Made by a program: the position numbers and the translations under genes. Shown here piece by piece: positions 1 to 54,436 of a DNA stretch of 64,000 nucleotides. The notes under the pieces are model-generated. The model made no database searches. It was not told where the DNA came from and was given only the letters and a program-made list of their open reading frames with translations. The DNA is from Macrostomum hystrix (Eukaryota > Animalia > Platyhelminthes): assembly GCA_950097015.1 (NCBI GenBank), contig CATNEN010000030.1, forward strand, positions 1,860,001 through 1,924,000. Direction: 5' to 3'. The stretch's first letter is position 1, and the number at the start of each line of letters is the position of its first letter.

Positions 1-800
1 CACCATCCCCAATTCAGCTATCCCACACCATCCCCAATTCAGCTATCCCACACCATCCCCAATCCAGCTATCCCAGACCATCCCTAATCCTCCAGCTATC
101 CCACACCATCCCTAATCCTCCAGCTATCCCACACCATCCCTAATCCTCCAGCTATCCCACACCATCCCTAATCCTCCAGCTATCCCACACCATCCCTAAT
201 CCTCCAGCTATCCCACACCATCCCTAATCCTCCAGCTATCCCACACCATCCCTAATCCTCCAGCTATCCCACACCATCCCTAATCCTCCAGCTATCCCAG
301 ACCATCCCTAATCCTCCAGCTATCCCACACCATCCCTAATCCTCCAGCTATCCCACACCATCCCTAATCTTACAGCTATCCCAGAGGACCCAGACCATCC
401 CTAATCCTCCAGCTATCCCACACCATCCCTAATCCTCCAGCTATCCCACACCATCCCTAATCTTACAGCTATCCCAGAGGACCCAGACCATCCCTAATCC
501 TCCAGCTATCCCACACCATCCCTAATCTTACAGCTATCCCAGAGGACCCAGACCATCCCTAATCCTCCAGCTATCCCATACCATCCCCAATCCAGCTATC
601 CCACACCATCCCCAACCCAGCTATCCCACAACATCCCCAACCCAGCTATCCCACACCATCCCCAACCCAGCTATCCCACAACATCCCCAACCCAGCTATC
701 CCACACCATCCCCAACCCAGCTATCCCACAACATCCCCAACCCAGCTATCCCACACCATCCCCAACCCAGCTATCCCACACCATCCCCAAACCAGCTTTC
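1..800. repeat. ~28-bp C-rich minisatellite (ccacaccatccctaatcctccagctatc) in intron upstream of the first visible LRR exon
   Basis: Tandem units read directly; array decays into the pyrimidine tract/AG acceptor at 838-839. Confidence 0.95.
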
Positions 801-839
801 CCACACCATCCCCAATCCTCCCGAATCCCCACTCCCCAG

Positions 840-1187
840 GTGACTGGACTATCAAATCTGCACACCTTGGAGCTGTCAAGAAACCGCCTGACGACGATAC
901 CTTTGGGCCTGCCGGCGCAGCTGACTCAGCTGTTTCTGAGCGGCAACCGGATTCAGCTGGTGCCCGAAGGCAGCTTTCTCAGCCTGACTCACCTGACCCG
1001 GCTGGACCTGTCGCGCAATTATTTGACCTCAGTCAGCGGCGCTTTCAACTTTGCCTGCCGAGCTCCGTCCCTGACTGAACTGGTGCTGGACCTGGCCGAA
1101 CTGGAAGTGATGAAGCGCAGAGGCCGCTTCAACGCGCCGCCGCCCGATATTCCAGCCGGTTCATCGATGGGGAAGAAAAGAAAAAAG
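840..1187 (+). CDS. LRR-TM-TIR-like receptor, LRR exon (gene continues upstream of window)
   Basis: ccccag acceptor at 839, gtgagc donor at 1188, 348 nt phase 0-0; LxxLxLxxN repeats (LHTLELSRN, LTQLFLSGN, LTRLDLSRN). Confidence 0.85.
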
Positions 1188-1339
1188 GTGAGCTTCAATC
1201 GAGAGCATGGGAGCATCGAAGCAATGTGGAAAGTGGAATTTAAGTAGCGAAAACTGACAAGCTTGAAAGGATTCGAAGCTCGAAGATTGAAATTTCTCAC
1301 GAGTTGAATTAAAAAACCGGGATTTTTTAGGCGGGACTT

Positions 1340-4300
1340 CCACAGCTTGGTGATCCGAGGCGAGTTTGGGATCTGTGGAAGTTGGGTATTTGGTGCAAAT
1401 TTGGGATCTGATTCGAATTGGGGATCTGGGGCGAGTTTGGGATCTGGGCCGAGTTTGGGATCTGATTCGAATTGGGGATCTGGGGCGAGTTTGGGATCTG
1501 GGGCGAGTTTGGGATCTGGGGCGAGTTTGTGATCTGGGGCAAGTTTGGGATCTGATTCGAATTGGGGATCTGGGGCGAGTTTGGGATCTGCGGCGAGTTT
1601 GGGATCTGATTCGAATTGGGGATCTGGGGCGAGTTGGGGATCTGATTCGAATTGGGGATCTGGGGCGAGTTGGTGATCTGATTCGAATTGTGGATCTGGG
1701 GCGAGTTGGGGATCTGATTCGAATTGTGGATCTGGGGCGACTTGGGGATCTGATTCGAATTGAGGATCTGGGGCGAGTTTGTGATCTGCGGCGAGTTTGG
1801 GATCTGATTCGAATTGGGTATCTGGGGCGAGTTGGTGATCTGATTCGAATTGTGGATCTGGGGCGAGTTTGGGATCTGGGGCGAGTTTGTGATCTGGGGC
1901 AAGTTTGGGATCTGATTCGAATTGGGGATCTGGGGCGAGTTGGGGATCTGATTCGAATTGGGGATCTGGGGCGAGTTGGGGATCTGATTCGAATTGGGGA
2001 TCTGGGGCGAGTTGGGGATCTGATTCGAATTGGGTATCTGGGGCGAGTTGGTGATCTGATTCGAATTGTGGATCTGGGGCGAGTTGGGGATCTGATTCGA
2101 ATTGAGGATCTGGGGCGAGTTTGTGATCTGCGGCGAGTTTGGGATCTGATTCGAATTGGGGATCTGGGGCGAGTTTGGGATCTGGGCCGAGTTTGGGATC
2201 TGATTCGAATTGGGGATCTGGGGCGAGTTTGGGATCTGGGGCGAGTTTGGGATCTGGGGCGAGTTTGTGATCTGGGCCGAGTTTGGGATCTGATTCGAAT
2301 TGGGGATCTGGGGCGAGTTTGGGATCTGGGGCGAGTTTGGGATCTGGGGCGAGTTTGTGATCTGGGGCAAGTTTGGGATCTGATTCGAATTGGGGATCTG
2401 GGGCGAGTTGGGGATCTGATTCGAATTGGGGATCTGGGGCGAGTTGGGGATCTGATTCGAATTGGGGATCTGGGGCGAGTTTGTGATCTGCGGCGAGTTT
2501 GGGATCTGATTCGAATTGGGGATCTGGGGCGAGTTTGGGATCTGCGGCGAGTTTGGGATCTGATTCGAATTGGGGATCTGGGGCGAGTTTGTGATCTGGG
2601 GCGAGTTGTGATCTGATTCGATTGGGATCTGATTCGAATTGGGATCTGGGCGAGTTTGGATCTGGGGCGAGTTTGGGATCTGATTCGAATTGGGGATCTG
2701 GGGCGAGTTGGGGATCTGATTCGAATTGGGGATCTGGGGCGAGTTTGTGATCTGATTCGAATTGGGGATCTGGGGCGAGTTTGTGATCTGATTCGAATTG
2801 GGGATCTGGGGCGAGTTTGTGATCTGATTCGAATTGGGGATCTGGGGCGAGTTTGTGATCTGGGGCAAGTTTGGGATCTGATTCGAATTGGGGATCTGGG
2901 GCGAGTTGGGGATCTGATTCGAATTGGGGATCTGGGGCGAGTTGGTGATCTGATTCGAATTGTGGATCTGGGGCGAGTTGGGGATCTGATTCGAATTGGG
3001 TATCTGGGGCGAGTTGGTGATCTGATTCGAATTGTGGATCTGGGGCGAGTTGGGGATCTGATTCGAATTGAGGATCTGGGGCGAGTTTGTGATCTGCGGC
3101 GAGTTTGGGATCTGATTCGAATTGGGGATCTGGGGCGAGTTTGGGATCTGGGCCGAGTTTGGGATCTGATTCGAATTGGGGATCTGGGGCGAGTTTGGGA
3201 TCTGGGGCGAGTTTGGGATCTGGGGCGAGTTTGTGATCTGGGGCAAGTTTGGGATCTGATTCGAATTGGGGATCTGGGGCGAGTTTGGGATCTGCGGCGA
3301 GTTTGGGATCTGATTCGAATTGGGGATCTGGGGCGAGTTGGGGATCTGATTCGAATTGGGGATCTGGGGCGAGTTGGGTGATCTGATTCGAATTGGTGGA
3401 TCTGGGGCGAGTTGGGGATCTGATTCGAATTGTGGATCTGGGGCGAGTTGGGGATCTGATTCGAATTGAGGATCTGGGGCGAGTTTGTGATCTGCGGCGA
3501 GTTTGGGATCTGATTCGAATTGGGGATCTGGGGCGAGTTTGGGATCTGGGCCGAGTTTGGGATCTGATTCGAATTGGGGATCTGGGGCGAGTTTGGGATC
3601 TGGGGCGAGTTTGGGATCTGGGGCGAGTTTGGATCTGATCGAATTGGATCTGGGGCAAGTTTGGGATCTGATTCGAATTGGGGATCTGGGGCGAGTTTGG
3701 GATCTGCGGCGAGTTTGGGATCTGATTCGAATTGGGGATCTGGGGCGAGTTGGGGATCTGATTCGAATTGGGGATCTGGGGCGAGTTGGTGATCTGATTC
3801 GAATTGTGGATCTGGGGCGAGTTGGGGATCTGATTCGAATTGTGGATCTGGGGCGAGTTGGGGATCTGATTCGAATTGAGGATCTGGGGCGAGTTTGTGA
3901 TCTGCGGCGAGTTTGGGATCTGATTCGAATTGGGGATCTGGGGCGAGTTTGTGATCTGCGGCGAGTTTGGGATCTGATTCGAATTGGGGATCTGGGGCGA
4001 GTTTGTGATCTGGGGCGAGTTTGTGATCTGATTCGAATTGGGGATCTGGGGCGAGTTTGTGATCTGATTCGAATTGTGGATCTGGGGCGAGTTGGGGATC
4101 TGATTCGAATTGGGGATCTGGGGCGAGTTTGTGATCTGATTCGAATTGGGGATCTGGGGCGAGTTTGTGATCTGATTCGAATTGGGGATCTGGGGCGAGT
4201 TTGTGATCTGATTCGAATTGGGGATCTGGGGCGAGTTTGTGATCTGATTCGAATTGGGGATCTGGGGCGAGTTTGTTATCTCGGGCGAGTTTGTGATTTG

Positions 4301-4500
4301 ATTCGAATTGGGGATCTGCGGCGAGTTTGTGATCTGGGGCGAGTTTGTGATCTGGGGCGAGTTTGTGATCTGGGGCGAGTTTGTGATCTGCGGCGAGTTT
4401 GTGATCTGGGGTGAGTTTGTGATCTGCGGCGAGTTTGGGATCTGGGGTGAGTTTGTGATCTGCGGCGAGTTTGGGATCTGGTTCAAGTTGGGGATCTGGG
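1340..4500. repeat. 18-bp two-unit minisatellite (ggggcgagtttgggatct / gattcgaattggggatct), intronic
   Basis: Two 18-mers sharing the ggatct end alternate irregularly; explains the 600-1190 aa ORFs. Confidence 0.95.
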
Positions 4501-4615
4501 AGAATTAAGTAATCTATTATAACTGAGGATCTGAGGGAATCGGGGATCAGGTTAAATGAGGATCTGAGGCGTGAAACCCGTATCTTGCTAACCAAGTAAA
4601 ATCGCTCACCGCTAG

Positions 4616-4896
4616 GCCCTGCTGGAGTACACATCCACCCTTCTGGACTCCATGCGAGCCTCCTGTGCCAGCGACCCCCTGCCGGTCTTGCAGCCGGCTC
4701 CCCCAGATCCACCGGCTGGCGCAGAAGAGCCGCAGTCACTTCGGGACGCCCAGAGACTCGACGACTCGACTGCCCTCGCCAGCCTAGGCGATGCGGGTGG
4801 GGGCGGCCGGATGTCTGCAGTCGGAATTGTTTTAATCATCGTCGGCATCGTTGCGCCCGCGGTGGCGGTCATTGTCGGGTGCAAGTACAGGCGCAG
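4616..4896 (+). CDS. LRR receptor, juxtamembrane + transmembrane exon
   Basis: gctag acceptor at 4615, gttaga donor at 4897; AVGIVLIIVGIVAPAVAVIVGC followed by KYRRR stop-transfer. Confidence 0.8.
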
Positions 4897-4946
4897 GTTA
4901 GATAATTCTGAAGCTTTTGCGAATTGCACAGCTTTAACTTGGCTCC

Positions 4947-5460
4947 TATCCCTTCAGTTATCCCATAGTTTAATCCCTATTCCTTCAGTTATCCCATAGT
5001 TTAATCCCTATTCCTTCAGTTATCCCATAGTTTTATCCCTATTCCTTCAGTTATCCCATAGTTTTATCCCTATTCCTTCAGTTATCCCATAGTTTTATCC
5101 CTATTCCTTCAGTTATCCCATAGTTTTATCCCTATTCCTTCAGTTATCCCAGAGTTTTATCACTACTCCTTCAGTTATCCCATAGTTTAATCCCTACTCC
5201 TTCAGTTATCCCATAGTTTAATCCCTACTCCTTCAGTTATCCCATAGTTTAATCCCTACTCCTTCAGTTATCCCATAGTTTAATCCCTACTCCTTCAGTT
5301 ATCCCATAGTTTAATCCCTACTCCTTCAGTTATCCCATAGTTTAATCCCTACTCCTTCAGTTATCCCATAGTTTTATCCCTACTCCTTCAGCTATCCCAT
5401 AGTTTAATCCCTAGTCCTTCAGTTATCCCAGAGTTTTATCCCTATTCCTTCAGTTATCCA
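4947..5460. repeat. 31-bp minisatellite (ccttcagttatcccatagtttaatccctatt), intronic
   Basis: About 16 tandem units. Confidence 0.95.
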
Positions 5461-5524
5461 ACTTTTAGCCTGGCAAAACTGGCAATGCACCGCATTTACA
5501 CAATCGATCCGTTGGCGTGTCCAG

Positions 5525-5743
5525 GTTTCGCTGCTACCGATCTTTGCGAGGTACGAACAGTGCCTCTGCAGCAGCAGCCGTAGCAGCTTCCAACCGCAGC
5601 AGGCAGGCGGCCAATAGTCGGGACACTCTGGTGACCAACAATCATTCGAATCGAACCTACGAGCATATCGGTGGTTCGTTTGAGATGAGATCTGTACTGC
5701 AGCAGCAGCAGCTGCAGCAGCAGCAGCAGCCAGAAGTTCCAGG
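5525..5743 (+). CDS. LRR receptor, cytoplasmic linker exon (YEHI motif, polyQ)
   Basis: Acceptor at 5524 completes AG|G Arg codon; donor gtgtgt at 5744 (phase 2) matches acceptor at 6414. The frame also stops at 5774, so a short isoform is possible. Confidence 0.65.
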
Positions 5744-6058
5744 GTGTGTACTTTTAGTTTGTGCACCAAATTGAGCTTGTATCTCAGTGGTCAGAGCTTT
5801 TGACTTCTGACCGAGAGGTCAGCTGGGGTAGAAATTATGGTCAGTCCAAGGGCTGAACAGTTGTACACAGCTTTGGACGCGCCGCACAATAGCTGCGGCA
5901 GTGCCGCTTGCTGTACACCTGGACTAACTAGGCTAGTTAATATTTTTATCTTTTATTATCGAATCTTTTGCGCCAATTTTTTAACCTGAAACTTTTTCGC
6001 AAGACCCGCTTCCTAGACTCTGGTATAGACCTTTGAACCAATTTTAAACCTCTTATAA

Positions 6059-6365
6059 CACTTTGATAAGAGCCGCCACCCACTTCTTAGACTCTGGAAC
6101 ACTTTGATAAGAGCCGCCACCCACTTCTTAGACTCTGGAACACTTTGATAAGAGCCGCCACCCACTTCTTAGACTCTGGAACACTTTGATAAGAGCCGCC
6201 ACCCACTTCTTAGACTCTGGAACACTTTGACAAGAGCCGCCACCCACTTCTTAGACTCTGGAACACTTTGACAAGAGCCGCCACCCACTTCTTAGACTCT
6301 GGAACACTTTGACAAGAGCCGCCACCCACTTCTTAGACTCTGGAACACTTTGATAAGAGCCGCCA
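6059..6365. repeat. 41-bp minisatellite (ctttgataagagccgccacccacttcttagactctggaaca), intronic
   Basis: About 7 units. Confidence 0.95.
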
Positions 6366-6414
6366 GCCAATCCAGGCTAGCCAAAATTTCCAAGCCATCT
6401 GCTCTCTTTGCCAG

Positions 6415-6691
6415 GTCTAATCCCAATGACGAGCGAGTTCAAAGCCCGATGTCCCGCTCAGAATCGCAAGAATCCTTCGAAGAAGACGAGATGGCGGAGG
6501 CTGAAGCGCTTCGCCTTCCTCGGGCGGAGGGCGGCATTCGCAGGAGCGCCTCACTGTGCAGTATTCGACGAATGGCACTGCTGATTGGCCTGTCCGCGGA
6601 GCTATATTTCACCGACAAATTGAACGAGGATTATGACAACATAGCTTCTAACTTTATTTTTGTGAACGAGGCCACCTGCCAAACTCTGCCT
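6415..6691 (+). CDS. LRR receptor, acidic linker + N-half of TIR-like domain
   Basis: gctctctttgccag acceptor, phase-compatible (GG|G); gtgagg donor at 6692, phase 0; ...RMALLIGLSAELYFTDKLNEDYDNIASNFIFVNEATCQTLP. Confidence 0.7.
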
Positions 6692-6699
6692 GTGAGGCT

Positions 6700-7337
6700 T
6701 GACTCTATCTTACCAGACATGACTCTATCTTACCAGACATGACACTGCCTCACCAGACATGACACTGCCTCACCAGACATGACACTATCTTACCAGACAT
6801 GACACTATCTCACCAGACATGACACTGCCTCACCAGACATGACACTATCTTACCAGACATGACACTATCTTACCAGACATGACTCTATCTCACCAGACAT
6901 GACACTGCCTCACCAGACATGACACTATCTTACCAGACATGACACTATCTCACCAGACATGACACTATCTCACCAGACATGACACTATCTCACCAGACAT
7001 GACACTATCTTACCAGACATGACTCTATCTCACCAGACATGACACTGCCTCACCAGACATGACACTGCCTCACCAGACATGACACTGCCTCACCAGACAT
7101 GACACTGCCTCACCAGACATGACACTATCTCACCAGACATGACACTATCTTACCAGACATGACACTATCTCACCAGACATGACACTATCTTACCAGACAT
7201 GACACTATCTCACCAGACATGACACTATCTCACCAGACATGACACTATCTTACCAGACATGACACTATCTCACCAGACATGACACTATCTTACCAGACAT
7301 GACACTGCCTCACCAGACATGACACTATCTTACCAGT
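6700..7337. repeat. 20-bp minisatellite (gacactatcttaccagacat), intronic
   Basis: About 31 units starting ~10 nt after the donor. Confidence 0.95.
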
Positions 7338-7380
7338 TGGCAAATTCATTCCAGTTCTCAATCTTAACTAAACATTGCAG

Positions 7381-7656
7381 GACTTGTCGTCCGTGCAAAC
7401 CGTATTTGTCATGCTGAGCGAACACCTGCTGGATAACTCCGAACTTCTTAATTTGCTAAGAACGCTATTGAAAGATTCGGGCGTCAAAGAAAAGACAAAA
7501 ATAATCTGCAATATCGAGAACGACACCCCGGAATTCGGCGGTCGCTTGAGCTCCGCTTGCCCAATTCTGCACAGGATTTATTTGAAATATCGGATTCGCC
7601 TGATTCCATGGAAGACGTCGGAAAGGTCACTCCGTGCGCTAGCCATGTGCATCTGA
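7381..7656 (+). CDS. LRR receptor, terminal exon: C-half of TIR-like domain
   Basis: ctaaacattgcag acceptor, phase 0; VQTVFVMLSEHLL / KIICNIE / CPILHRIYLKYRIRLIPW resemble TIR betaC, betaD and alphaD-betaE; stop TGA. Confidence 0.65.
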   Translation, partial: DLSSVQTVFVMLSEHLLDNSELLNLLRTLLKDSGVKEKTKIICNIENDTPEFGGRLSSACPILHRIYLKYRIRLIPWKTSERSLRALAMCI

Positions 7657-9756: not shown

Positions 9757-10095
9757 ATGAGCCAGCAGCCGCCGCCACCTCCGCCTTACGGATTCGCCCT
9801 GCAGGGCTATCCCATGGCTGACCAGACTGGTGGCTACAATGCTCTCTCGCCTGAGCAGCAGCAGTTGCAGCAGCAGCAGTTTGAGCAACAGCAGCAGCAG
9901 TTCATGCAGAATCAGCAGCAGCCAGTCACGGCCAGTGTCAACCAACAGCAGTCGCAGCCTCCGCCCTACGGTCTGGCGCCCACAGGCGGCGGCTACGGCT
10001 ACGGCTACGGCATGATGCAGGGCTACCCAATTCAGGGCGCAGTGGCGGGCGGCAGCACTTATTATTATCAACAGGGCTACGGGCAGCAGCCGCAG
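9757..10095 (+). CDS. P/Q/G/Y-rich low-complexity protein, exon 1
   Basis: ATG 6 nt after ttttaaacag acceptor; 113 codons; gtattt donor, phase 0. Confidence 0.7.
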
Positions 10096-10187
10096 GTATT
10101 TCAAAATGTGTTTACTTTTTTTCAAACGGTTAAATATTTAAGGATTCGAGGAGGCAGCAAAATGATGTACTTTTTGAGAGGCTCAAA

Positions 10188-10530
10188 GGGGGTGAGTAGC
10201 TGAGCGGTTAACGCGTTTGCCTCTCGCATCAAGGTCCCTGAGGCCACATTAATTTGGGGCGCAGCCGCCGGAGAGAAGACTTGGGGGGCTTGTCGTGCAA
10301 TATTTACGCCTTTGAGTGCCAACCTCCAAGACACAGTGACAGTGCCTGACGATGAGAAATTCACTGCAGATGTACACACCTGTGTGTGTGTGCCTGCGGA
10401 CAGTATCTGTGTGCGTGTGTGCTCAGGAGTCAGTGAAATGGGCAGAATTGCCTCTCTCTGGCTGCGGGTCAAGTGTCACCAAGTGATTTGCGATGGCCGC
10501 AGCCCATCTGTAATTATTAATATTATTATT
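10188..10530 (+). mobile_element. tRNA-derived SINE family A, copy 2 (most complete, (ATT)n-like tail), intronic
   Basis: Same head (ggggtgagtagctgagcggttaacgcgtttgcc) and body as the other copies. Confidence 0.75.
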
Positions 10531-12984: not shown

Positions 12985-13275
12985 CTGAGGTTGAGCGAGA
13001 AAATGGTCAGCGAGTTAGGGTGATAGCTCTGAACTTTTCCTTGAGTAGAAAAAATGTGCTGTAAAAATATACAGTAAAAGAAACGCGGGGAATCCTCAGC
13101 GCTTGCCAGAGGGGGGACTCAATTTGCTAGTCGATTATACGAGTCGTACAGCGGCTCGTACTAATTGTCAGATTCTAGATAAACTACAGAAATCATGAGA
13201 CAAAAGTTTTGCATTAGCAGGTGCTTCACCTAAGCTTGCCAATATGCTACGTGTAGAGTCGAAACAACAACCCAC

Positions 13276-13907
13276 CTTTGCAGTGTTATGCTGCTGCTGC
13301 TCCGGCTGCTGATGCTGCTGCTGTTGAGTTGGCTGTCCGTGCGGATGGAGCGACATGCCGTGGCAGTTGGCGTGCCCGGCCAGATCGAAATGCTGCATCT
13401 CCCAGTTCTTGTCGCGCTCCAGCAGCCGCGGGCCGAGCAGGGAAATGAGGAAGGCGCCCAGCGGTGCGGTGAGCATGATCACGATGGCGGCTATGGTGAG
13501 TATCTGGCGCGCCATGTCCACGGAGCGACTGTCTCTTGGCACCTGGGCCAGCGCCATGTCCAGCGCCACCGGCCCGATGGCCGCCTGCACAGTGGCCTTG
13601 GGCAGCCAGGAAAATGGCACAAACAGGCGCTCCCGGAAGCTCAGGTCCGTGCCCAGCATGCACAGGAAGCTGGCTAACATGCGGAACGCCAGGCCGATGC
13701 CAACTACGGCCAGGCCTTTGGCCAGCGCAGGCGGCTGAATCTTTTCGAAGTTGATCTGGCCGCCAATCAAGCCGAACAGCATCGGCTGCATGAACCACCA
13801 GAGAGTGTCCAGGGGCGCCAGCATGGGGTTATCCTCCTCCGCCCAGCCGTCCCAGCGGCGCCAGCCGTAGCCCGCCACGAAGGCCAGTGTGAGTACGCCG
13901 AGGGCGC
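13276..13907 (-). CDS. SLC9B: SLC9B/NHA antiporter exon 3
   Basis: QPMLFGLIG...FRERLFVPFSWLPKATVQAAIGP...IVIMLTAPLGA; canonical AG/GT, phase 1 in, phase 0 out. Confidence 0.92.
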
Positions 13908-15504: not shown

Positions 15505-17157
15505 TGGCATCCGCCACCTTCCTCTCAAATGAGTTCTCGTGGCATCCGCCACCTTCCTCTCAAATGAGTTCTCGTGGCATCCGCCACCTTCCTCTCTAAT
15601 GAGTTCTCGTGGCATTTGCCACCTTCCTCTCTAATGAGTTCTCGTGGCATTTGCCACCTTCCTCTCTAATGAGTTCTCGTGGCATTTGCCACCTTCCTCT
15701 CTAATGAGTTCTCGTGGCATCCGCCACCTTCCTCTCTAATGAGTTCTCGTGGCATTTGCCACCTTCCTCTCTAATGAGTTCTCGTGGCATTTGCCACCTT
15801 CCTCTCAAATGAGTTCTCGTGGCATTTGCCACCTTCCTCTCTAATGAGTTCTCGTGGCATCCGCCACCTTCCTCTCTAATGAGTTCTCGTGGCATCCGCC
15901 ACCTTCCTCTCTAATGAGTTCTCGTGGCATCCGCCACCTTCCTCTCAAATGAGTTCTCGTGGCATCCGCCACCTTCCTCTCTAATGAGTTCTCGTGGCAT
16001 CCGCCACCTTCCTCTCAAATGAGTTCTCGTGGCATCCGCCACCTTCCTCTCTAATGAGTTCTCGTGGCATCCGCCACCTTCCTCTCAAATGAGTTCTCGT
16101 GGCATCCGCCACCTTCCTCTCAAATGAGTTCTCGTGGCATCCGCCACCTTCCTCTCAAATGAGTTCTTGTGGCATCCGCCACCTTCCTCTCTAATGAGTT
16201 CTCGTGGCATTTGCCACCTTCCTCTCCAATGAGTTCTCATGGCATCCGCCACCTTCCTCTCTAATGAGTTCTCGTGGCATCCGCCACCTTCCTCTCAAAT
16301 TAGTTCTCGTGGCATCCGCCACCTTCCTCTCTAATGAGTTCTCGTGGCATCCGCCACCTTCCTCTCAAATGAGTTCTCGTGGCATCCGCCACCTTCCTCT
16401 CAAATGAGTTCTCGTGGCATCCGCCACCTTCCTCTCAAATGAGTTCTCGTGGCATCCGCCACCTTCCTCTCAAATGAGTTCTCGTGGCATCCGCCACCTT
16501 CCTCTCAAATGAGTTCTTGTGGCATCCGCCACCTTCCTCTCTAATGAGTTCTCGTGGCATCCGCCACCTTCCTCTCTAATGAGTTCTCGTGGCATCCGCC
16601 ACCTTCCTCTCAAATGAGTTCTTGTGGCATCCGCCACCTTCCTCTCTAATGAGTTCTCGTGGCATTTGCCACCTTCCTCTCTAATGAGTTCTCGTGGCAT
16701 TTGCCACCTTCCTCTCTAATGAGTTCTCGTGGCATCCGCCACCTTCCTCTCTAATGAGTTCTCGTGGCATCCGCCACCTTCCTCTCAAATGAGTTCTCGT
16801 GGCATCCGCCACCTTCCTCTCTAATGAGTTCTCGTGGCATTTGCCACCTTCCTCTCAAATGAGTTCTCGTGGCATTTGCCACCTTCCTCTCTAATGAGTT
16901 CTCGTGGCATCCGCCACCTTCCTCTCAAATGAGTTCTCGTGGCATCCGCCACCTTCCTCTCAAATGAGTTCTCGTGGCATCCGCCACCTTCCTCTCAAAT
17001 GAGTTCTTGTGGCATCCGCCACCTTCCTCTCTAATGAGTTCTCGTGGCATTTGCCACCTTCCTCTCTAATGAGTTCTCGTGGCATTTGCCACCTTCCTCT
17101 CTAATGAGTTCTCGTGGCATCCGCCACCTTCCTCTCCAATGAGTTCTCATGGCATCT
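15505..17157. repeat. 35-bp minisatellite (gagttctcgtggcatccgccaccttcctctcaaat)
   Basis: About 47 units in NHA intron 2. Confidence 0.95.
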
Positions 17158-17551
<394 letters not shown>

Positions 17552-17565
17552 TGGCTATAGCTCAC

Positions 17566-17985
17566 CTGCGCCCTGCAGGTGGGCTCTCTCGCAGCCGAGC
17601 AGCGCGATGACGCCACCGCCAACAAGGAAGATGAAGCGGAACATGACCGGCCGCTTGTGGCTCTTGTGCGGGATGAACCAGAGCAGCGCGCCCAGGCACA
17701 GCCCGTAGAGGATGCCGATGACGGCGTCGCGAGGACCGCGCAGAATAGCCCCGGCAACGCCGCGACCACCGCCGCCGCCGGCGCCGCTGCCGTCGCCACC
17801 GCTTTCAGCGTCGCTCGAAGCGATGCCCAGAGCCAAGCTGAAGCCGGTGATGGCCAGAACATCGTCCATGGAGGAGGCGGCGATGATGAGGGTGGGGATG
17901 CCCTTCTCGACGCCGTAGCCGCGGTACTCCAGCTTCAGCATGCCGAGAACCACGACGGCGGGGGACACCGCGCCCAGGACGAAGC
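17566..17985 (-). CDS. SLC9B: SLC9B/NHA antiporter exon 2
   Basis: GFVLGAVSPAVVV...GYGVEKGIPTLIIAASSMDDVLAITGF (SLC9B DD motif); phase 1-1. Confidence 0.93.
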
Positions 17986-21000: not shown

Positions 21001-21966
21001 CCAATAGCTCTCAGACTCACACAAAAGGAATCCACAGTCTAGACCCCAATAGCTCTCAGACTCACACAAAAGGAATCCACAGTCTAGACCCCAATAGCTC
21101 TCAGACTCACACAAAAGGAATCCACAGGTCTAGACCCCAATAGCTCTCAAACTCACACAAAAGGAATCCACAGTCTAGACCCCAATAGCTCTCAGACTCA
21201 CACAAAAGGAATCCACAGTCTAGACCCCAATAGCTCTCAGACTCACACAAAAGGAATCCACAGTCTAGATCCCAATAGCTCTCAAACTCACACAAAAGGA
21301 ATCCACAGTCTAGACCCCAATAGCTCTCAGACTCACACAAAAGGAATCCACAGTCTAGACCCCAATAGCTCTCAACTCACACAAAAGGAATCCACAGTCT
21401 AGATCCCAATAGCTCTCAGACTCACACAAAAGGAATCCACAGTCTAGATCCCAATAGCTCTCAGACTCACACAAAAGGAATCCACAGTCTAGACCCCAAT
21501 AGCTCTCAAACTCACACAAAAGGAATCCACAGTCTAGACCCCAATAGCTCTCAGACTCACACAAAAGGAATCCACAGTCTAGATCCCAATAGCTCTCAGA
21601 CTCACACAAAAGGAATCCACAGTCTAGACCCCAATAGCTCTCAGACTCACACAAAAGGAATCCACAGTCGAGACCCCAATAGCTCTCAGACTCACACAAA
21701 AGGAATCCACAGTCTAGACCCCCAATAGCTCTCAGACTCACACAAAAGGAATCCACAGTCTAGATCCCAATAGCTCTCAGACTCACACAAAAGGAATCCA
21801 CAGTCTAGACCCCAATAGCTCTCAGACTCACACAAAAGGAATCCACAGTCTAGATCCCAATAGCTCTCAGACTCACACAAAAGGAATCCACAGTCTAGAC
21901 CCCAATAGCTCTCAAACTCACACAAAAGGAATCCACAGTCTAGACCCCAATAGCTCTCAAACTCAC
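18082..21966. repeat. 45-bp minisatellite filling NHA intron 1; each unit carries GTGAGT on the - strand
   Basis: About 86 units (ctcacacaaaaggaatccacagtctagaccccaatagctctcaga); array starts at intron base +1. Confidence 0.97.
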
Positions 21967-22882
21967 CCAGTATGAATCCCCAGGCCCAGGGGAAGCCCAG
22001 GATGAAGTGGGCCGCAATGGCTCCCACAGCGCTCTCCACCAGGCAGGGAATGAAGGCCAAGCGGAACACGGTGGCCGACAGTCGCCGGAGCGTGTTGGGA
22101 TCCAGACTCAGGCCGGCCCTCAGCAGAATGGTGCACAGCGCCAGCTCGCGCAGCTTGTTAAAGTACACTTTGCTGATGTGGCGAGCCACGTTGATGCCGG
22201 GCGCGTTGCCAAGGACGCAGCCGACAATGAGCATGCCCAGCAGCGGGGGGAGGTTGAATTTCTTAGAAAGCGAGCTTGCGGTCATGGAGCAGACAAATAG
22301 GACGAATAATCCGAAGAAATTTCCGCCTAAACAGTTGCTAGCCGCCTCCGCCGCATCCGTGCCGTTGCCATCCGACCGGCTGGTGTTCGGTCCGACTTTG
22401 GCGACGGCGGCTGAGCAGCTCCTGGGTAGGGCCTCGTCGCCGACAATTACAAAGAGCAGGCCGTACAGCACCAGGATTGATAGGAGGCCGGCGATCCAGC
22501 GGGCCGCCTGGCCGTGCGGCGGGCACATGAAGGCGTAGCGCAGCCGCTGCCAGCACTTCGGCTCCTCCGGCAACGGGTTGGCCGCGGTTGACATCGCCTG
22601 GCGGAGTCGGTCGAGCAGGCGGCCGCAGCGGCTTCTGCCGGCGGTTGAACTGGTCGAGTCAGAAGGCGGTAGTTGCTGCCGCTGCTGCCGCAGCTGCTGC
22701 TCTGGCTCGAGTTGTAATGAGATTGGCGACGGCGGCTGATGCGTCGTTGAAGGCTGCTGCATCTGGCGGTGATGCCGAGGACGACCCGGAGACGGCGGCG
22801 GGTCTGGACGGAGCGCCACGGAGCTGCGCCGCTGCCGGGCTCGCGACTCGTGGCGCCGAATCGACTGGCGCAGGGCGCGCAT
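21967..22882 (-). CDS. SLC9B: SLC9B/NHA antiporter exon 1 (first in-frame ATG; frame open to a possible acceptor at 22967)
   Basis: AFMCPPHG...LPPLLGMLIVGCVLGN...LRELALCTILLRAGLSLDP...AFIPCLVES...PWAWGFILG; donor gtgagt. Confidence 0.9.
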
Positions 22883-23484
22883 GCTCTGCGGGCGGCAGTC
22901 GGGACAGTGCTCTTTCTTAGAAATCTTTCTCAGAGTCGATTTTTGATGAAAATCCCCATCGATGAGCTGGGTATTTAGTCGAAAGCCCCATTGGTGGCAC
23001 GACAACGCCAGAAATCCATGGGGTTTAATCTAAAATGAGAAATCTTTAAAGAAGCAAGCAAATTTGTGACAATCGCAATTAGTTGAAGCCTACGAAAAGG
23101 CCGTTGAAAAGACAGTTGGAACGGTCGAAAACTTTAAGACTGCCGCTTTAAAGTAGCAGAAATAGCTGTCAAGCCATTGTCCAGGAGCTTTATTGAAGAA
23201 GAACCAGATTCCACCCGCCCACGCGCAGCTACGCCGACGAAATGCAACTTCTTTCGATTGAAGATTGAGAAAGATTGGGAAATACGGAAATGACAGATTG
23301 GCTGGGTGTCCCATCTGCGTTGGACTTAGTGTAATCCCCTGCGGCTCCTCTCGGCAACCACGGACCTTCGTCTCACATCATGCTCAGAGTTGCAATGCTC
23401 AGCAGAGTATGCCCAGACATTACCACGCAGCTGTGATTGATGCCCTGGTTCGATTCCCCTTCCTAAAACACTAGGAAACACTCT

Positions 23485-52694: not shown

Positions 52695-52770
52695 GTAAGA
52701 ATATTAATTTATAATGAAATTGCGACACAAACTTATTCAAATTATCTTTCAATCAACTCAGCCAACGCAG

Positions 52771-53992
52771 GTAGTCGCGGCCACATGCTCACAACAATGG
52801 ATGGTCCGTCGGCCATTGGCGGGACTGCTTCGCGTTTGCCCACAGCTGATCAGCTCGGAGCTGGCGTCTCGGCACGGTCGACTCCTGCAGCTAATTCTGG
52901 CCGGGCTAGTTCGCATGCTCGGCTTTTCCACCAACCTCATGGCCGACTACCAGCGTCTTTTGAAGTCGCCTTCGAGTCCAATGGCTGCTAATGATGAATG
53001 GGAACTGTTGCAGGAGAGCAGCATTCTCGCTAGACAACATGGCCTCACTTTTGTGCGCTCTCCGGCAGTTCGCAGGTTTGCGGAGCGCCACTTCAACTGC
53101 AGTGTGGGCCTGCCGTTGGCCCCCGGGCGTGGAGCAGATGCCTGGGACCCTGTCTTCATGTTTCCGTCAGTCCTCTCGGCAGTCCCAGCTTCGCCAGGTG
53201 TATCTGGGCTTGACGAAGGCACGCTAGCACTTTTAGAGGACTCTGGGTGGTACATTGTGAACTACTCTCTGGCTAACAGATTTGCTTGGGGTAAACAAGC
53301 TGGTTGCGGGTTCTCAACAAACTGCTCAACAACTGAATCGGCACATCCGAGCCCAATGTTCTGTTCAGCTGCCGACCTACTGCCGAGTGCTCTGAAGCCG
53401 GACTTCTCACACAGGTCTGCGGGGTCCTGCGATCGCATTGCTGGCACAAACTGCAGCACGATTTTGCCTCAGGACAGTGAATTGTGCAAATTTGATGGCA
53501 ACTTTCGCAGCCTGCAGCTGATTAATGCAGCCAGCAATGAGACACAGTGCTTATCAGTAGAATGCCCATCTAAAGCTGATGCAAGCAGCGCCAGTTATGT
53601 AGTAACTCGAAACAAACTCCGAGCTGTCTGTCCGGCAAATGCTTCGGCTGTTGATTTCGGCGATGGCGTCCAGCTGCTCTGCGTCCACATCAGCCTCGTC
53701 TGCCCGGCCCAGTCGTCTGTGCTGGACCTCCTGGCAGGGTTTTCCTGGCCGCAGAGTATTAGCAATGCCAGCACTACCACCACCATGGAATATCACAATG
53801 GAATCAGCACGCGCGGAGGCCTGGCCAGCAGCGCCGACACCGCATCTCAAGGCCCAGTTGCTAGCAGGTCTGGCGCTAGCACGGGCACCACAACATCCAC
53901 TAGCAGCCCTAGTGCACGCACAAGAGCTGTCAGCAACGAACTTTCTACGTCCGCTACAACGGTTCCAATGTCTTCCATTCAAACAACGCCGA
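52771..53992 (+). CDS. M8-like protein exon 4: degenerate catalytic domain, Cys-rich region, Ser/Thr stalk
   Basis: RPLAGLLRVCP, LGFS, RHFNC, TLALLEDSGWYIVNYSLANRFAWGKQAGCGF are leishmanolysin/invadolysin motifs; gtaagt donor. Confidence 0.88.
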
Positions 53993-54436
53993 GTAAGTTT
54001 TCAACAGATGTGCCAATATTTATCAGCCATCCCGAAGCCTTATTTTTGAATATCTTAACAATTTTCTCGAGCCTCGGAACTTCAGGTCATCCCCAATTCC
54101 CCTTTTTCGATCATATTTTGCAGCTGTACAGGATCATTCAGTGAGACAAAAAATTCCTCCGATGAAAAGGAGTCTACTAGCGACACCTTTGAATCAGAGC
54201 TGTAAGCGTCAAATAGGTCGGAAACGGAAATTCCATTGACTAAATGCAGCTTTTGGTGAAGGAAAATATTCACTTAATGCGAAAAATTCTTTGTTTTGTT
54301 ACGCAAGCTAAATAAAATAACTATGAGAAAGCACTAACTACGAGTCACCTGCACTCAATATATATTTGATGCTTTAAATTGTTGTGATTTCAGTTCGCGG
54401 TGCATGCAGCGAAAGATTGCTCAAGCCGCATAATCT

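What the first reader, a model, noticed from the sequence alone, without database searches (positions are those of the whole stretch)
840..7656. Toll-like architecture: LRR-TM-long linker-degenerate TIR-like domain
Seen: five exons join in phase (840-1187, 4616-4896, 5525-5743, 6415-6691, 7381-7656). They give LRRs, one TM helix, a ~130-aa linker (NRTYEHI, polyQ, RRSASL) and a ~125-aa alternating beta/alpha C-terminus. The ORF track splits this domain, so it is easy to miss. Known: TIR betaC-alphaC, betaD and alphaD-betaE read like RKTIFVLSxNF, ILILLE and LRKIM..TYLEW. Here they read VQTVFVMLSEHLL, KIICNIE and CPILHRIYLKYRIRLIPW. Box 1 (YDAFISY) and the BB-loop RDxxPG are not recognisable. Inference: a divergent TLR-like or SEFIR-like receptor that may not use MyD88. 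As I recall, canonical TLRs are reported as scarce or absent in flatworms, so this would matter if the host is Macrostomum.
Basis: partly seen in the sequence, partly recalled or inferred. Interest (0 to 1): 0.75.

Follow-up and report, generated by a model that had tools for sequence, protein, structure and literature searches.

The report
Flatworm Toll-like receptor, degenerate TIR
This is the 3' part of a real five-exon flatworm gene for a membrane receptor with leucine-rich repeats outside the cell and, after an unusually long linker, an inner domain that is most likely a badly eroded Toll/IL-1 (TIR) signalling domain, in a phylum that published surveys say has no Toll-like receptors.

Summary
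The five exons have AG/GT borders and keep the frame. Each aligns, in order, to one Macrostomum lignano protein (UniProt A0A1I8HY75, 789 aa; 30-54% identity per exon), so the splice chain is conserved in a sister species. Exon 1 is LRR (Pfam 6.9e-14). Exon 2 holds one TM helix.

No standard test calls the C-terminal domain a TIR. Pfam, NCBIfam, PADLOC, PDB sequence search, BLASTP and Foldseek are all blank, and 1.84 billion representative proteins give only the M. lignano relative.

Five weaker lines do point to TIR, in one register:
- Language-model features: best cluster is TIR_2, score 0.93.
- hhalign against 19 Toll/TLR TIR domains: P 0.003, 1 of 300 column shuffles as good.
- Smith-Waterman of the M. 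lignano domain: collinear over nearly a whole TIR; 0 of 1000 shuffles and 8 of 1500 real segments as good.
- Structure search with the exon-5 model: 14 of the top 50 solved chains are TIR proteins.
- Atlas shape search: the two best rows are TIR clusters.

Box 1, the BB loop and the FW motif are gone. My reading is a TIR-derived, degenerate domain (about 0.68).

Earlier notes of this scan report other Toll-like receptor genes elsewhere in this genome.

The parts
1..839 (+). 3' end of the upstream intron, filled by a 25-28 bp minisatellite; earlier LRR exons lie before the window
   Evidence: Tandem Repeats Finder 1-821, period 28, 29.6 copies; AG at 838-839; exon 1 aligns to P0004 from residue 343 onwards
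840..1187 (+). Exon: last three LRRs plus a capping repeat and the juxtamembrane stalk ending in KKRKK
   Evidence: Pfam LRR_8 6.9e-14 and LRR_4 3.6e-13; 53% identity to P0004 343-460
4616..4896 (+). Exon: Pro-rich extracellular stalk and the single transmembrane helix (about 4814-4879), then a basic stop-transfer stretch
   Evidence: Kyte-Doolittle maximum 3.09 at residues 69-87 of the exon; aligns to P0004 462-548, which includes its TM helix
5525..5743 (+). Exon: low-complexity cytoplasmic linker with the conserved block NSRDTLVTNNHSNRTYEHIGG (5613-5675), then polyQ
   Evidence: 43% identity to P0004 549-623; the block reads NSRETLMSQNHGNPTYERING in M. lignano, which contains NPxY and YxxI
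6415..6550 (+). Exon 4, first part: acidic Ser-rich linker (SESQESFEEDE) and the conserved RLPRAEGG
   Evidence: Aligned to P0004 627-675
6551..6691 (+). Exon 4, second part: N-terminal third of the TIR-like domain. Proposed betaA SLCSI, alphaA RRMALLIGLSAEL, betaB NFIFV and a shortened BB region. The register is uncertain.
   Evidence: ALLIGLSA is identical in M. lignano. The collinear Smith-Waterman alignment of the M. lignano copy to Toll TIRs covers this part. This piece alone gives no signal.
7381..7656 (+). Exon 5: C-terminal two thirds of the TIR-like domain (betaC to alphaE) and the stop codon
   Evidence: ESM features: best cluster TIR_2, 0.93. hhalign against the TIR alignment: P 0.015, 31% identity over 77 columns in the relaxed alignment. 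AlphaFold secondary structure beta-alpha-beta-alpha-coil-alpha. 14 of 50 VIA rows are TIR proteins.

Best explanation
The window holds the last five exons of a type I membrane receptor of a Macrostomum-type flatworm. The protein has an LRR ectodomain, one TM helix and a roughly 125-residue low-complexity cytoplasmic linker with a conserved tyrosine block. It ends in a 138-residue domain that descends from a protostome Toll-type TIR domain but has lost the box 1, BB-loop (RDxxPG) and FW signatures.

Shown here: the exon chain, the LRR, the TM helix, conservation of the whole layout in M. lignano, and weak but consistent sequence and shape similarity of the last domain to TIR.

Inferred: ligand binding by the LRRs brings two tails together, and the eroded TIR still works as a homotypic docking surface. 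It could act as a non-canonical signalling unit or as a regulatory or decoy receptor. The conserved N(P/R)TYE(R/H)I block may add a phosphotyrosine, PTB or endocytic input.

NAD-cleaving activity is unlikely. The glutamate that aligns with the catalytic position in this species is a glycine in M. lignano.
For: Gene model:
- GT-AG borders and carried frame.
- Collinear match of all five exons to M. lignano P0004; P0001, a cluster mate of P0004, matches exon 5 at E 8.5e-13.
- LRR: Pfam 6.9e-14. TM: hydropathy 3.09.

TIR descent:
1. ESM feature search with exon 5: best cluster TIR_2, score 0.93, 175 shared features, and all ten best family-bearing hits are TIR.
2. hhalign of the domain alignment A4 against 19 Toll/TLR TIR domains (A3): P 0.0026, in the alphaB-betaC-alphaC-betaD register. 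The column-shuffle null is 12.0 +/- 2.95 against an observed 24.2, with 1 of 300 as good.
3. The relaxed alignment pairs CPILHRIYLKYRIRLIPW with DPDL-RLYLKTNK-CIVW, and SLRALAM with KLRFAMP.
4. A Toll-TIR HMM against the M. lignano domain gives E 0.0016 for one comparison, with 4 of 2000 shuffles as good.
5. Smith-Waterman of the M. lignano domain against Toll-6/7-like TIRs gives z 4.7-6.3 and is collinear over nearly the whole TIR. The family-wise maximum is 57, against 35.6 +/- 4.7 for shuffles (0 of 1000) and 8 of 1500 real LRR segments.
6. VIA search of 48,161 solved chains with the exon-5 model: 14 of the top 50 rows are TIR proteins. They include RPP1, AtTIR, IL-18Rbeta, TLR1, MyD88, TRIF, SARM1 and Hydra TRR-2, each aligned to the C-terminal two thirds of its TIR.
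7. Atlas shape search: the two highest TM-by-query rows (0.58 and 0.55) are TIR clusters.
Against: - No curated model sees a TIR: Pfam at E up to 10, NCBIfam and PADLOC.
- PDB sequence searches with single pieces and with profiles list no TIR chain.
- BLASTP against single TIRs is not significant.
- Both AlphaFold models are poor (pLDDT 51 and 62), and Foldseek on both gives nothing.
- The longer model of the M. lignano domain gives ferredoxin-like noise and no TIR in VIA.
- The window's own exon 5 alone is weak: HMM E 0.019 with 168 of 2000 shuffles as good, and Smith-Waterman family-wise 91 of 1000.
- The exon-4 part alone shows no signal.
- The register of the N-terminal third is ambiguous. 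AlphaFold makes ALLIG a strand; the alignments make it helix alphaA.
Confidence: 0.68

Rival explanations
1. The C-terminal domain is a Macrostomum-specific alpha/beta domain unrelated to TIR. The resemblance would then be what any beta-alpha-beta cytoplasmic domain shows. The protein would be an LRR adhesion or guidance receptor, like chaoptin, artichoke or capricious, with its own novel tail.
Against: Five different methods point to the same family in the same register. A real-sequence null still gives 8 of 1500. The shared P.L.R.YLK...W...LR.AM string is specific to Toll-type TIRs. The reversed domain and the linker score at background, 33 and 32.
Confidence: 0.24
2. The gene model is wrong. 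Exons 4 and 5 would belong to another transcript, or the gene would end at the 5774 stop, and the 'domain' would be an accident of joining ORFs.
For: No RNA evidence could be obtained. The introns are full of minisatellites, which can confuse assembly.
Against: One M. lignano protein carries all five pieces in the same order with 43-54% identity in exons 3-5, and the boundaries fall at the same residues. All junctions are canonical and in phase.
Confidence: 0.04
3. The domain is a SEFIR domain (IL-17-receptor/Act1 type) and not a TIR.
For: SEFIR and TIR are distant relatives, and SEFIR lacks the TIR BB-loop signature. This is from general knowledge and was not tested beyond Pfam.
Against: No Pfam SEFIR match at E up to 10. 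No SEFIR structure is among the 50 VIA rows, while 14 are TIR proteins. The shared motifs are those of Toll TIRs.
Confidence: 0.04

Closest known systems
Macrostomum lignano A0A1I8HY75 / A0A1I8GD08 / A0A1I8IMJ0 (P0004, P0001, P0003)
   Same: Same layout: LRRs, KKRKK stalk, TM helix, linker with the N.TYE.I block, acidic Ser stretch, RAEGG, ALLIGLSA, then the DTPEFG and CP.LHRIYLKY domain. Identity is 30-54% per exon, and the exons align collinearly.
   Different: The M. lignano models lack a start and stop 21 residues before this gene's end, so betaE and alphaE are missing. P0001 lacks 17 residues of the TM helix. UniRef calls them 'PPM-type phosphatase domain-containing protein', although Pfam finds only LRRs.
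Protostome 'long' Toll receptors (Toll-6/7-like and Tollo; for example P0096, P0100, P0116, P0074)
   Same: LRR ectodomain, single TM helix and a C-terminal domain collinear with their TIR. Shared strings: R.I..LS.N(F/L) (betaC), (R/K).I. (betaD), P.L.R(L/I)YLK...W (alphaD-betaE) and LR.AM (alphaE).
   Different: No Pfam TIR call. Box 1 (YDAxxSY) is replaced by RRSASLCSI. There is no LCLHxRD / BB loop and no FW. alphaC is about 4 residues shorter. About 125 residues separate TM and domain, where these Tolls have a few tens as I recall. No LRRCT cysteine cluster lies next to the membrane.
TIR-less or LRR-only TLR-like proteins (Hydra HyLRR with HyTRR; vertebrate RP105/CD180)
   Same: LRR membrane proteins that take part in Toll-type sensing without a canonical TIR of their own. 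The Hydra case is as cited in PMC8609888; RP105 is from general knowledge.
   Different: Those proteins have essentially no cytoplasmic domain. This one keeps a conserved 138-residue domain and a conserved linker motif.
SEFIR domain receptors (IL-17R family)
   Same: A cytoplasmic STIR-superfamily domain without a classical BB loop, placed well after the TM helix (general knowledge).
   Different: Their ectodomain is fibronectin-III, not LRR. There is no SEFIR match here.

Membership tests
Toll-like receptor (criteria of PMC8609888: at least one LRR, a TM region and a TIR domain in one protein) | At least one extracellular LRR | tested here: met
   Pfam LRR_8 6.9e-14 in exon 1; the M. lignano orthologue scores LRR_8 5.3e-32
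Toll-like receptor | Single transmembrane helix between LRRs and cytoplasmic domain | tested here: met
   Hydropathy 3.09 over 19 residues in exon 2, basic residues after it
Toll-like receptor | TIR domain recognised by a curated model (Pfam PF01582 / PF13676) | tested here: not met
   No Pfam family at E up to 10 for exons 4 and 5 or for P0004:600-789
TIR domain (homology and fold) | Significant profile or structural similarity to TIR domains | tested here: inconclusive
   For: hhalign P 0.0026, Smith-Waterman family-wise 0 of 1000 and 8 of 1500, 14 of 50 VIA rows, ESM 0.93. Against: BLASTP, Foldseek and PDB sequence searches blank; models at pLDDT 51-62
TIR domain | Box 1, (F/Y)DAF(I/V)SY at betaA | tested here: not met
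   The aligned stretch reads RRSASLCSI here and NRSPSICSV in M. lignano, against LFDAYVSYS in Tolls
TIR domain | Box 2 / BB loop, LCLHxRDxxPG | tested here: not met
   The aligned stretch is ASNFIFVNEAT here and AAAAF--IRVDET in M. lignano. There is no RD and no Pro/Gly, and it is two or more residues shorter
TIR domain | Box 3, FW in alphaE | tested here: not met
   ERSLRALAM aligns with KWFWQKLRFAM. The FW is absent, while LR.AM is kept
TIR NADase (SARM1, plant and bacterial TIR enzymes) | Conserved catalytic Glu in the WCxxE stretch of alphaC | tested here: inconclusive
   In the low-confidence relaxed alignment, the E of SELLNLL sits under the Toll E of CRFEF. The M. lignano copy has G there, so it is not conserved within the family
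SEFIR domain | Match to the SEFIR model or to SEFIR structures | tested here: not met
   No Pfam hit; no SEFIR chain among the VIA rows
scc/mcc Toll ectodomain types | LRRCT cysteine cluster next to the membrane | tested here: not met
   No LRRCT (PF01463) in exon 1 or in P0004; only a weak LRRNT at the N-terminus of P0004 (E 0.019)

The most novel reading that the evidence does not exclude
A Macrostomum-specific receptor class in which a Toll-derived TIR has been rebuilt into a non-canonical module. It has no box 1, BB loop or FW and sits on a 125-residue linker. It would signal without MyD88-type TIR-TIR contacts, for instance through the conserved N(P/R)TYE(R/H)I phosphotyrosine/PTB-type block. 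That would be an alternative output wiring for an LRR pattern receptor in a phylum thought to lack TLRs.
Probability: 0.15. Interest if true: 0.75.

Novelty: new variant of a known kind. Interest (0 to 1): 0.55.

Why it matters
Surveys that require a model-recognised TIR report zero TLRs in flatworms. PMC8609888 (Table 1) lists M. lignano at 0, and PMC7958881 reports no LRR linked to a TIR in Schmidtea. A conserved LRR-TM receptor whose tail is a TIR eroded beyond the reach of Pfam would show that such surveys miss diverged members. It would give a concrete candidate for how these animals sense microbes or guide cells. It would also show which TIR parts can be lost (box 1, BB loop, FW) while the domain stays under selection. 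M. lignano is a transgenic and RNAi model, so the orthologue A0A1I8HY75 can be tested directly.

Tried and rejected
- Joined spliced protein: never sent to any tool. Exons were searched singly by reference, and the M. lignano protein served as the by-reference stand-in for the joined domain.
- Word search with exon 5: blank.
- Whole-library HMMER search with exon 5: only the M. lignano relative and a low-complexity false hit, P0002.
- Pfam, NCBIfam and PADLOC on the domain: nothing, or noise such as RT_UG26 at 0.048 and 3-dehydroquinate synthase at 0.1.
- PDB sequence searches: only short TRAP1/HSP75 and HGPRT noise.
- ESM feature search with the exon-4 half: uninformative PAS/MEKHLA rows under 0.9.
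- AlphaFold of P0004:655-789: pLDDT 51. Foldseek and VIA on it gave RRM or ferredoxin-like noise.
- Foldseek with the exon-5 model: nothing under E 0.7.
- BLASTP of the M. lignano domain against single Toll TIRs: not significant.
- Metagenome scan for further relatives: none.
- Paralogues in the window: none by tblastn.
- The PP2C phosphatase reading suggested by the UniRef name: rejected, because no PP2C domain is found.
Full report
**1. What is in the sequence**

The region holds five open stretches at 840-1187, 4616-4896, 5525-5743, 6415-6691 and 7381-7656. Each is preceded by AG and followed by GT. The cumulative lengths are 348, 629, 848, 1125 and 1401 bases, so the frame runs through to the TGA at 7654-7656.

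- Exon 1 is leucine-rich repeat (Pfam LRR_8 6.9e-14, LRR_4 3.6e-13).
- Exon 2 holds the only strongly hydrophobic stretch. Its 19-residue Kyte-Doolittle mean is 3.09, at VGIVLIIVGIVAPAVAVIV, and KYRRRFR follows it.
- Exons 3 and 4 give a low-complexity tail.
- The second half of exon 4 plus exon 5 give an alternating hydrophobic/amphipathic pattern.

Every intron is filled with its own minisatellite. The window begins inside such an array, so the gene's 5' exons lie before the window.

**2. Is the splice chain real?**

Each exon was searched by reference.

A whole-library HMMER search with exon 5 against 1.84 billion representatives returned one true relative, P0001 from Macrostomum lignano (E 8.5e-13), and one low-complexity false hit. 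Its 90% cluster holds three M. lignano UniProt entries. The most complete is P0004 (A0A1I8HY75, 789 aa).

All five window exons align to P0004 in order and without overlap:

| Exon | P0004 residues | Identity |
|---|---|---|
| e1 | 343-460 | 53% |
| e2 | 462-548, including its TM helix | 30% |
| e3 | 549-623 | 43% |
| e4 | 627-717 | 45% |
| e5 | 719-789 | 54% |

The junctions fall at matching residues: KKRKK|, RR|, and P|(E)D.

A sister-species protein therefore carries exactly this chain. I take that as good evidence that the model is right and that the gene does not end at the 5774 stop. Identity of about 50% also shows that the host is a Macrostomum-type flatworm but not M. lignano itself.

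By this comparison at least 342 residues, about a dozen more LRRs and a weak LRRNT, are encoded upstream of the window.

**3. What standard tests say about the C-terminal domain**

They say nothing.
- Pfam at E up to 10 gives no family for exons 2-5 or for P0004:600-789. NCBIfam and PADLOC give only noise.
- phmmer and profile searches of all PDB sequences list no TIR chain.
- BLASTP of the M. lignano domain against single Toll TIR domains is not significant.
- AlphaFold with the shallow alignments available gives poor models. pLDDT is 51 for P0004:655-789 and 62 for exon 5.
- Foldseek finds nothing with either model.
- A metagenome scan found no further relatives.

**4. Evidence that it is nevertheless TIR-derived**

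(a) The language-model feature search with exon 5 puts a TIR_2 cluster first. The score is 0.93 with 175 shared features. The tool states that nine in ten true family hits reach 170, against one or two in ten chance hits. All ten best family-bearing hits are TIR.

(b) A word search with the whole of P0004 showed that the ectodomain's relatives are generic LRR proteins: podocan, chaoptin, artichoke, Tollo and TLR7/8. It also supplied real Toll/TLR proteins. I located their TIR domains and aligned 19 of them as A3.
- hhalign of the flatworm domain alignment (A4) against A3 gives P 0.0026. It covers 54 columns, pairing ..TSAQRYFIMLTENL..LLEDS..KVKIIAN..TPE with ..SSKRTIVILSKNFL..VLKDRR..RRLIVIV..VPS.
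- Permuting the columns of A4 300 times gives 12.0 +/- 2.95 against an observed 24.2. One permutation is as good.
- For the exon-5 alignment (A2), P is 0.015, again with 1 of 300 as good.
- With a relaxed alignment threshold, exon 5 aligns to the end of the TIR at 31% identity over 77 columns. CPILHRIYLKYRIRLIPW pairs with DPDL-RLYLKTNK-CIVW, and SLRALAM with KLRFAMP.

(c) An HMM built from A3 scores the M. lignano domain at E 0.0016 for a single comparison, with 4 of 2000 shuffles as good. It scores the window's exon 5 at E 0.019, with 168 of 2000 as good.

(d) Smith-Waterman of the M. lignano domain against Toll-6/7-like TIRs gives z 4.7-6.3. The alignment is collinear over almost a whole TIR. 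The best score over all 19 TIRs is 57.
- Shuffled queries give 35.6 +/- 4.7, with 0 of 1000 as good.
- Real 114-residue LRR segments give 8 of 1500 as good.
- The reversed domain scores 33 and the linker 32.
- The window's exon 5 alone is weaker, at 91 of 1000. The exon-4 part alone gives no signal.

- Thirteen are TIR domains or align within one: RPP1, AtTIR, IL-18Rbeta, RPS4/RRS1, SpbK, SARM1 twice, TRIF, TLR1, Hydra TRR-2, AbTir, MyD88 and IL-1RAcPb. Each is aligned to the C-terminal two thirds of its TIR, which is the expected register.
- The fourteenth is Cat1. I count it as a TIR protein from memory, and I did not check whether the aligned range 50-141 is its TIR.

The other model, searched the same way, gave no TIR, so the method does not favour TIR by itself.

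(f) In the Atlas shape search, the two rows with the highest TM by query (0.58 and 0.55) are TIR clusters.

**5. What has been lost**

Against the Toll alignment, the changes are these:

| Feature | Toll consensus | This gene | M. lignano |
|---|---|---|---|
| Box 1 | YDAxxSYS | RRSASLCSI | NRSPSICSV |
| betaB / BB loop | LCLHxRDxx.. | ASNFIFVNEAT | AAAAF--IRVDET |
| Box 3 | FW | absent (LR.AM kept) | region missing from the model |

- The betaB / BB-loop stretch has no Arg-Asp and no Pro/Gly, and it is shorter.
- alphaC is about four residues shorter.
- The Glu that aligns with the catalytic Glu of TIR NADases in this species is Gly in M. lignano.

The register of the first third is uncertain. 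The alignments make SLCSI betaA and ALLIGLSAEL helix alphaA. Either way, RRSASL lies at or near the domain's start and not in mid-linker.

**6. Other conserved features**

The linker is mostly low complexity, but it keeps a 20-residue block. It reads NSRDTLVTNNHSNRTYEHIGG here and NSRETLMSQNHGNPTYERING in M. lignano. The M. lignano version contains a classical NPxY, and both contain YxxI.

An acidic Ser-rich stretch (S.ESF(E/D)ED) and RAEGG follow.

The tail domain is as conserved as the LRRs (54% against 53%), while the extracellular stalk is not (30%). That pattern speaks for selection on the tail.

**7. Reading**

The most likely reading (about 0.68) is a Toll-derived receptor whose TIR has eroded below the reach of curated models. 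By the survey criteria of PMC8609888 it is not a TLR, because it has no model-recognised TIR. I therefore file it as a TLR-like variant and not as a member.

How it signals is inferred only. The options are homotypic docking through what remains of the TIR surface, a regulatory or decoy role, or input through the conserved tyrosine block.

The main rival (about 0.24) is an unrelated lineage-specific alpha/beta domain on an adhesion-type LRR protein. A wrong gene model and SEFIR are each unlikely (about 0.04).

**8. Context**

PMC8609888 lists zero TLRs for M. lignano and other flatworms. PMC7958881 reports no LRR linked to a TIR in Schmidtea. A further search found no paper reporting a Macrostomum TLR.

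Earlier notes of this scan, which I did not check, report other Toll-like receptor genes on other pieces of this same genome. They include intact classic ones and one diverged spliced one. This gene would therefore be one more, and unusually eroded, member of a wider flatworm repertoire and not the only one.

**9. Limits**

- There is no RNA evidence.
- The complete joined domain was not folded or searched.
- The family has only two effective sequences, so profiles and models are shallow.
- The shuffle nulls do not preserve secondary-structure periodicity. The real-sequence null partly covers this.

Noticed in passing
window 1-821, 1347-4500, 4951-5459, 6057-6369, 6700-7336: Every intron of this gene is filled by a different minisatellite: 25-28 bp x 30, 18/36/54 bp x about 88 (3.1 kb), 31 bp x 16, 41 bp x 7.6 and 20 bp x 32. 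The arrays make up most of the intron length and create long spurious ORFs on both strands.
   Followed up: partly
P0001 versus P0004 (M. lignano), residues about 530-548 of P0004: P0001 lacks 17 residues that form most of the TM helix of P0004. The gap ends exactly where this gene's exon 2/3 junction lies. This could be an alternative donor inside the TM exon or a gene-model artefact.
   Followed up: no
P0001, P0003, P0004 (UniRef names): The M. lignano orthologues are named 'PPM-type phosphatase domain-containing protein', although Pfam finds only LRR families in them. The name looks like an automatic mislabel, perhaps from PHLPP-like LRRs.
   Followed up: partly
window 13171-13878 (-) and 21695-23005 (-): Two minus-strand ORFs match the C-terminal and N-terminal parts of the Na+/H+ exchanger transmembrane domain (Pfam PF00999, 6.9e-09 and 6.8e-10). 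This suggests one NHE gene spanning about 10 kb.
   Followed up: no
window 52714-54141 (+): An ORF with a partial leishmanolysin (Peptidase_M8) match, 2.8e-08.
   Followed up: no
window 9757-10203 (+): An ATG-started 148-aa ORF just downstream of the receptor gene. It begins with a PPPPPPPY stretch and is very rich in Gln, Gly and Tyr, so it may be the first exon of a low-complexity PY-motif protein.
   Followed up: no
window 17104-17862 (-): An ORF with a weak match to the cysteine-rich C_tripleX repeat (6e-05).
   Followed up: no
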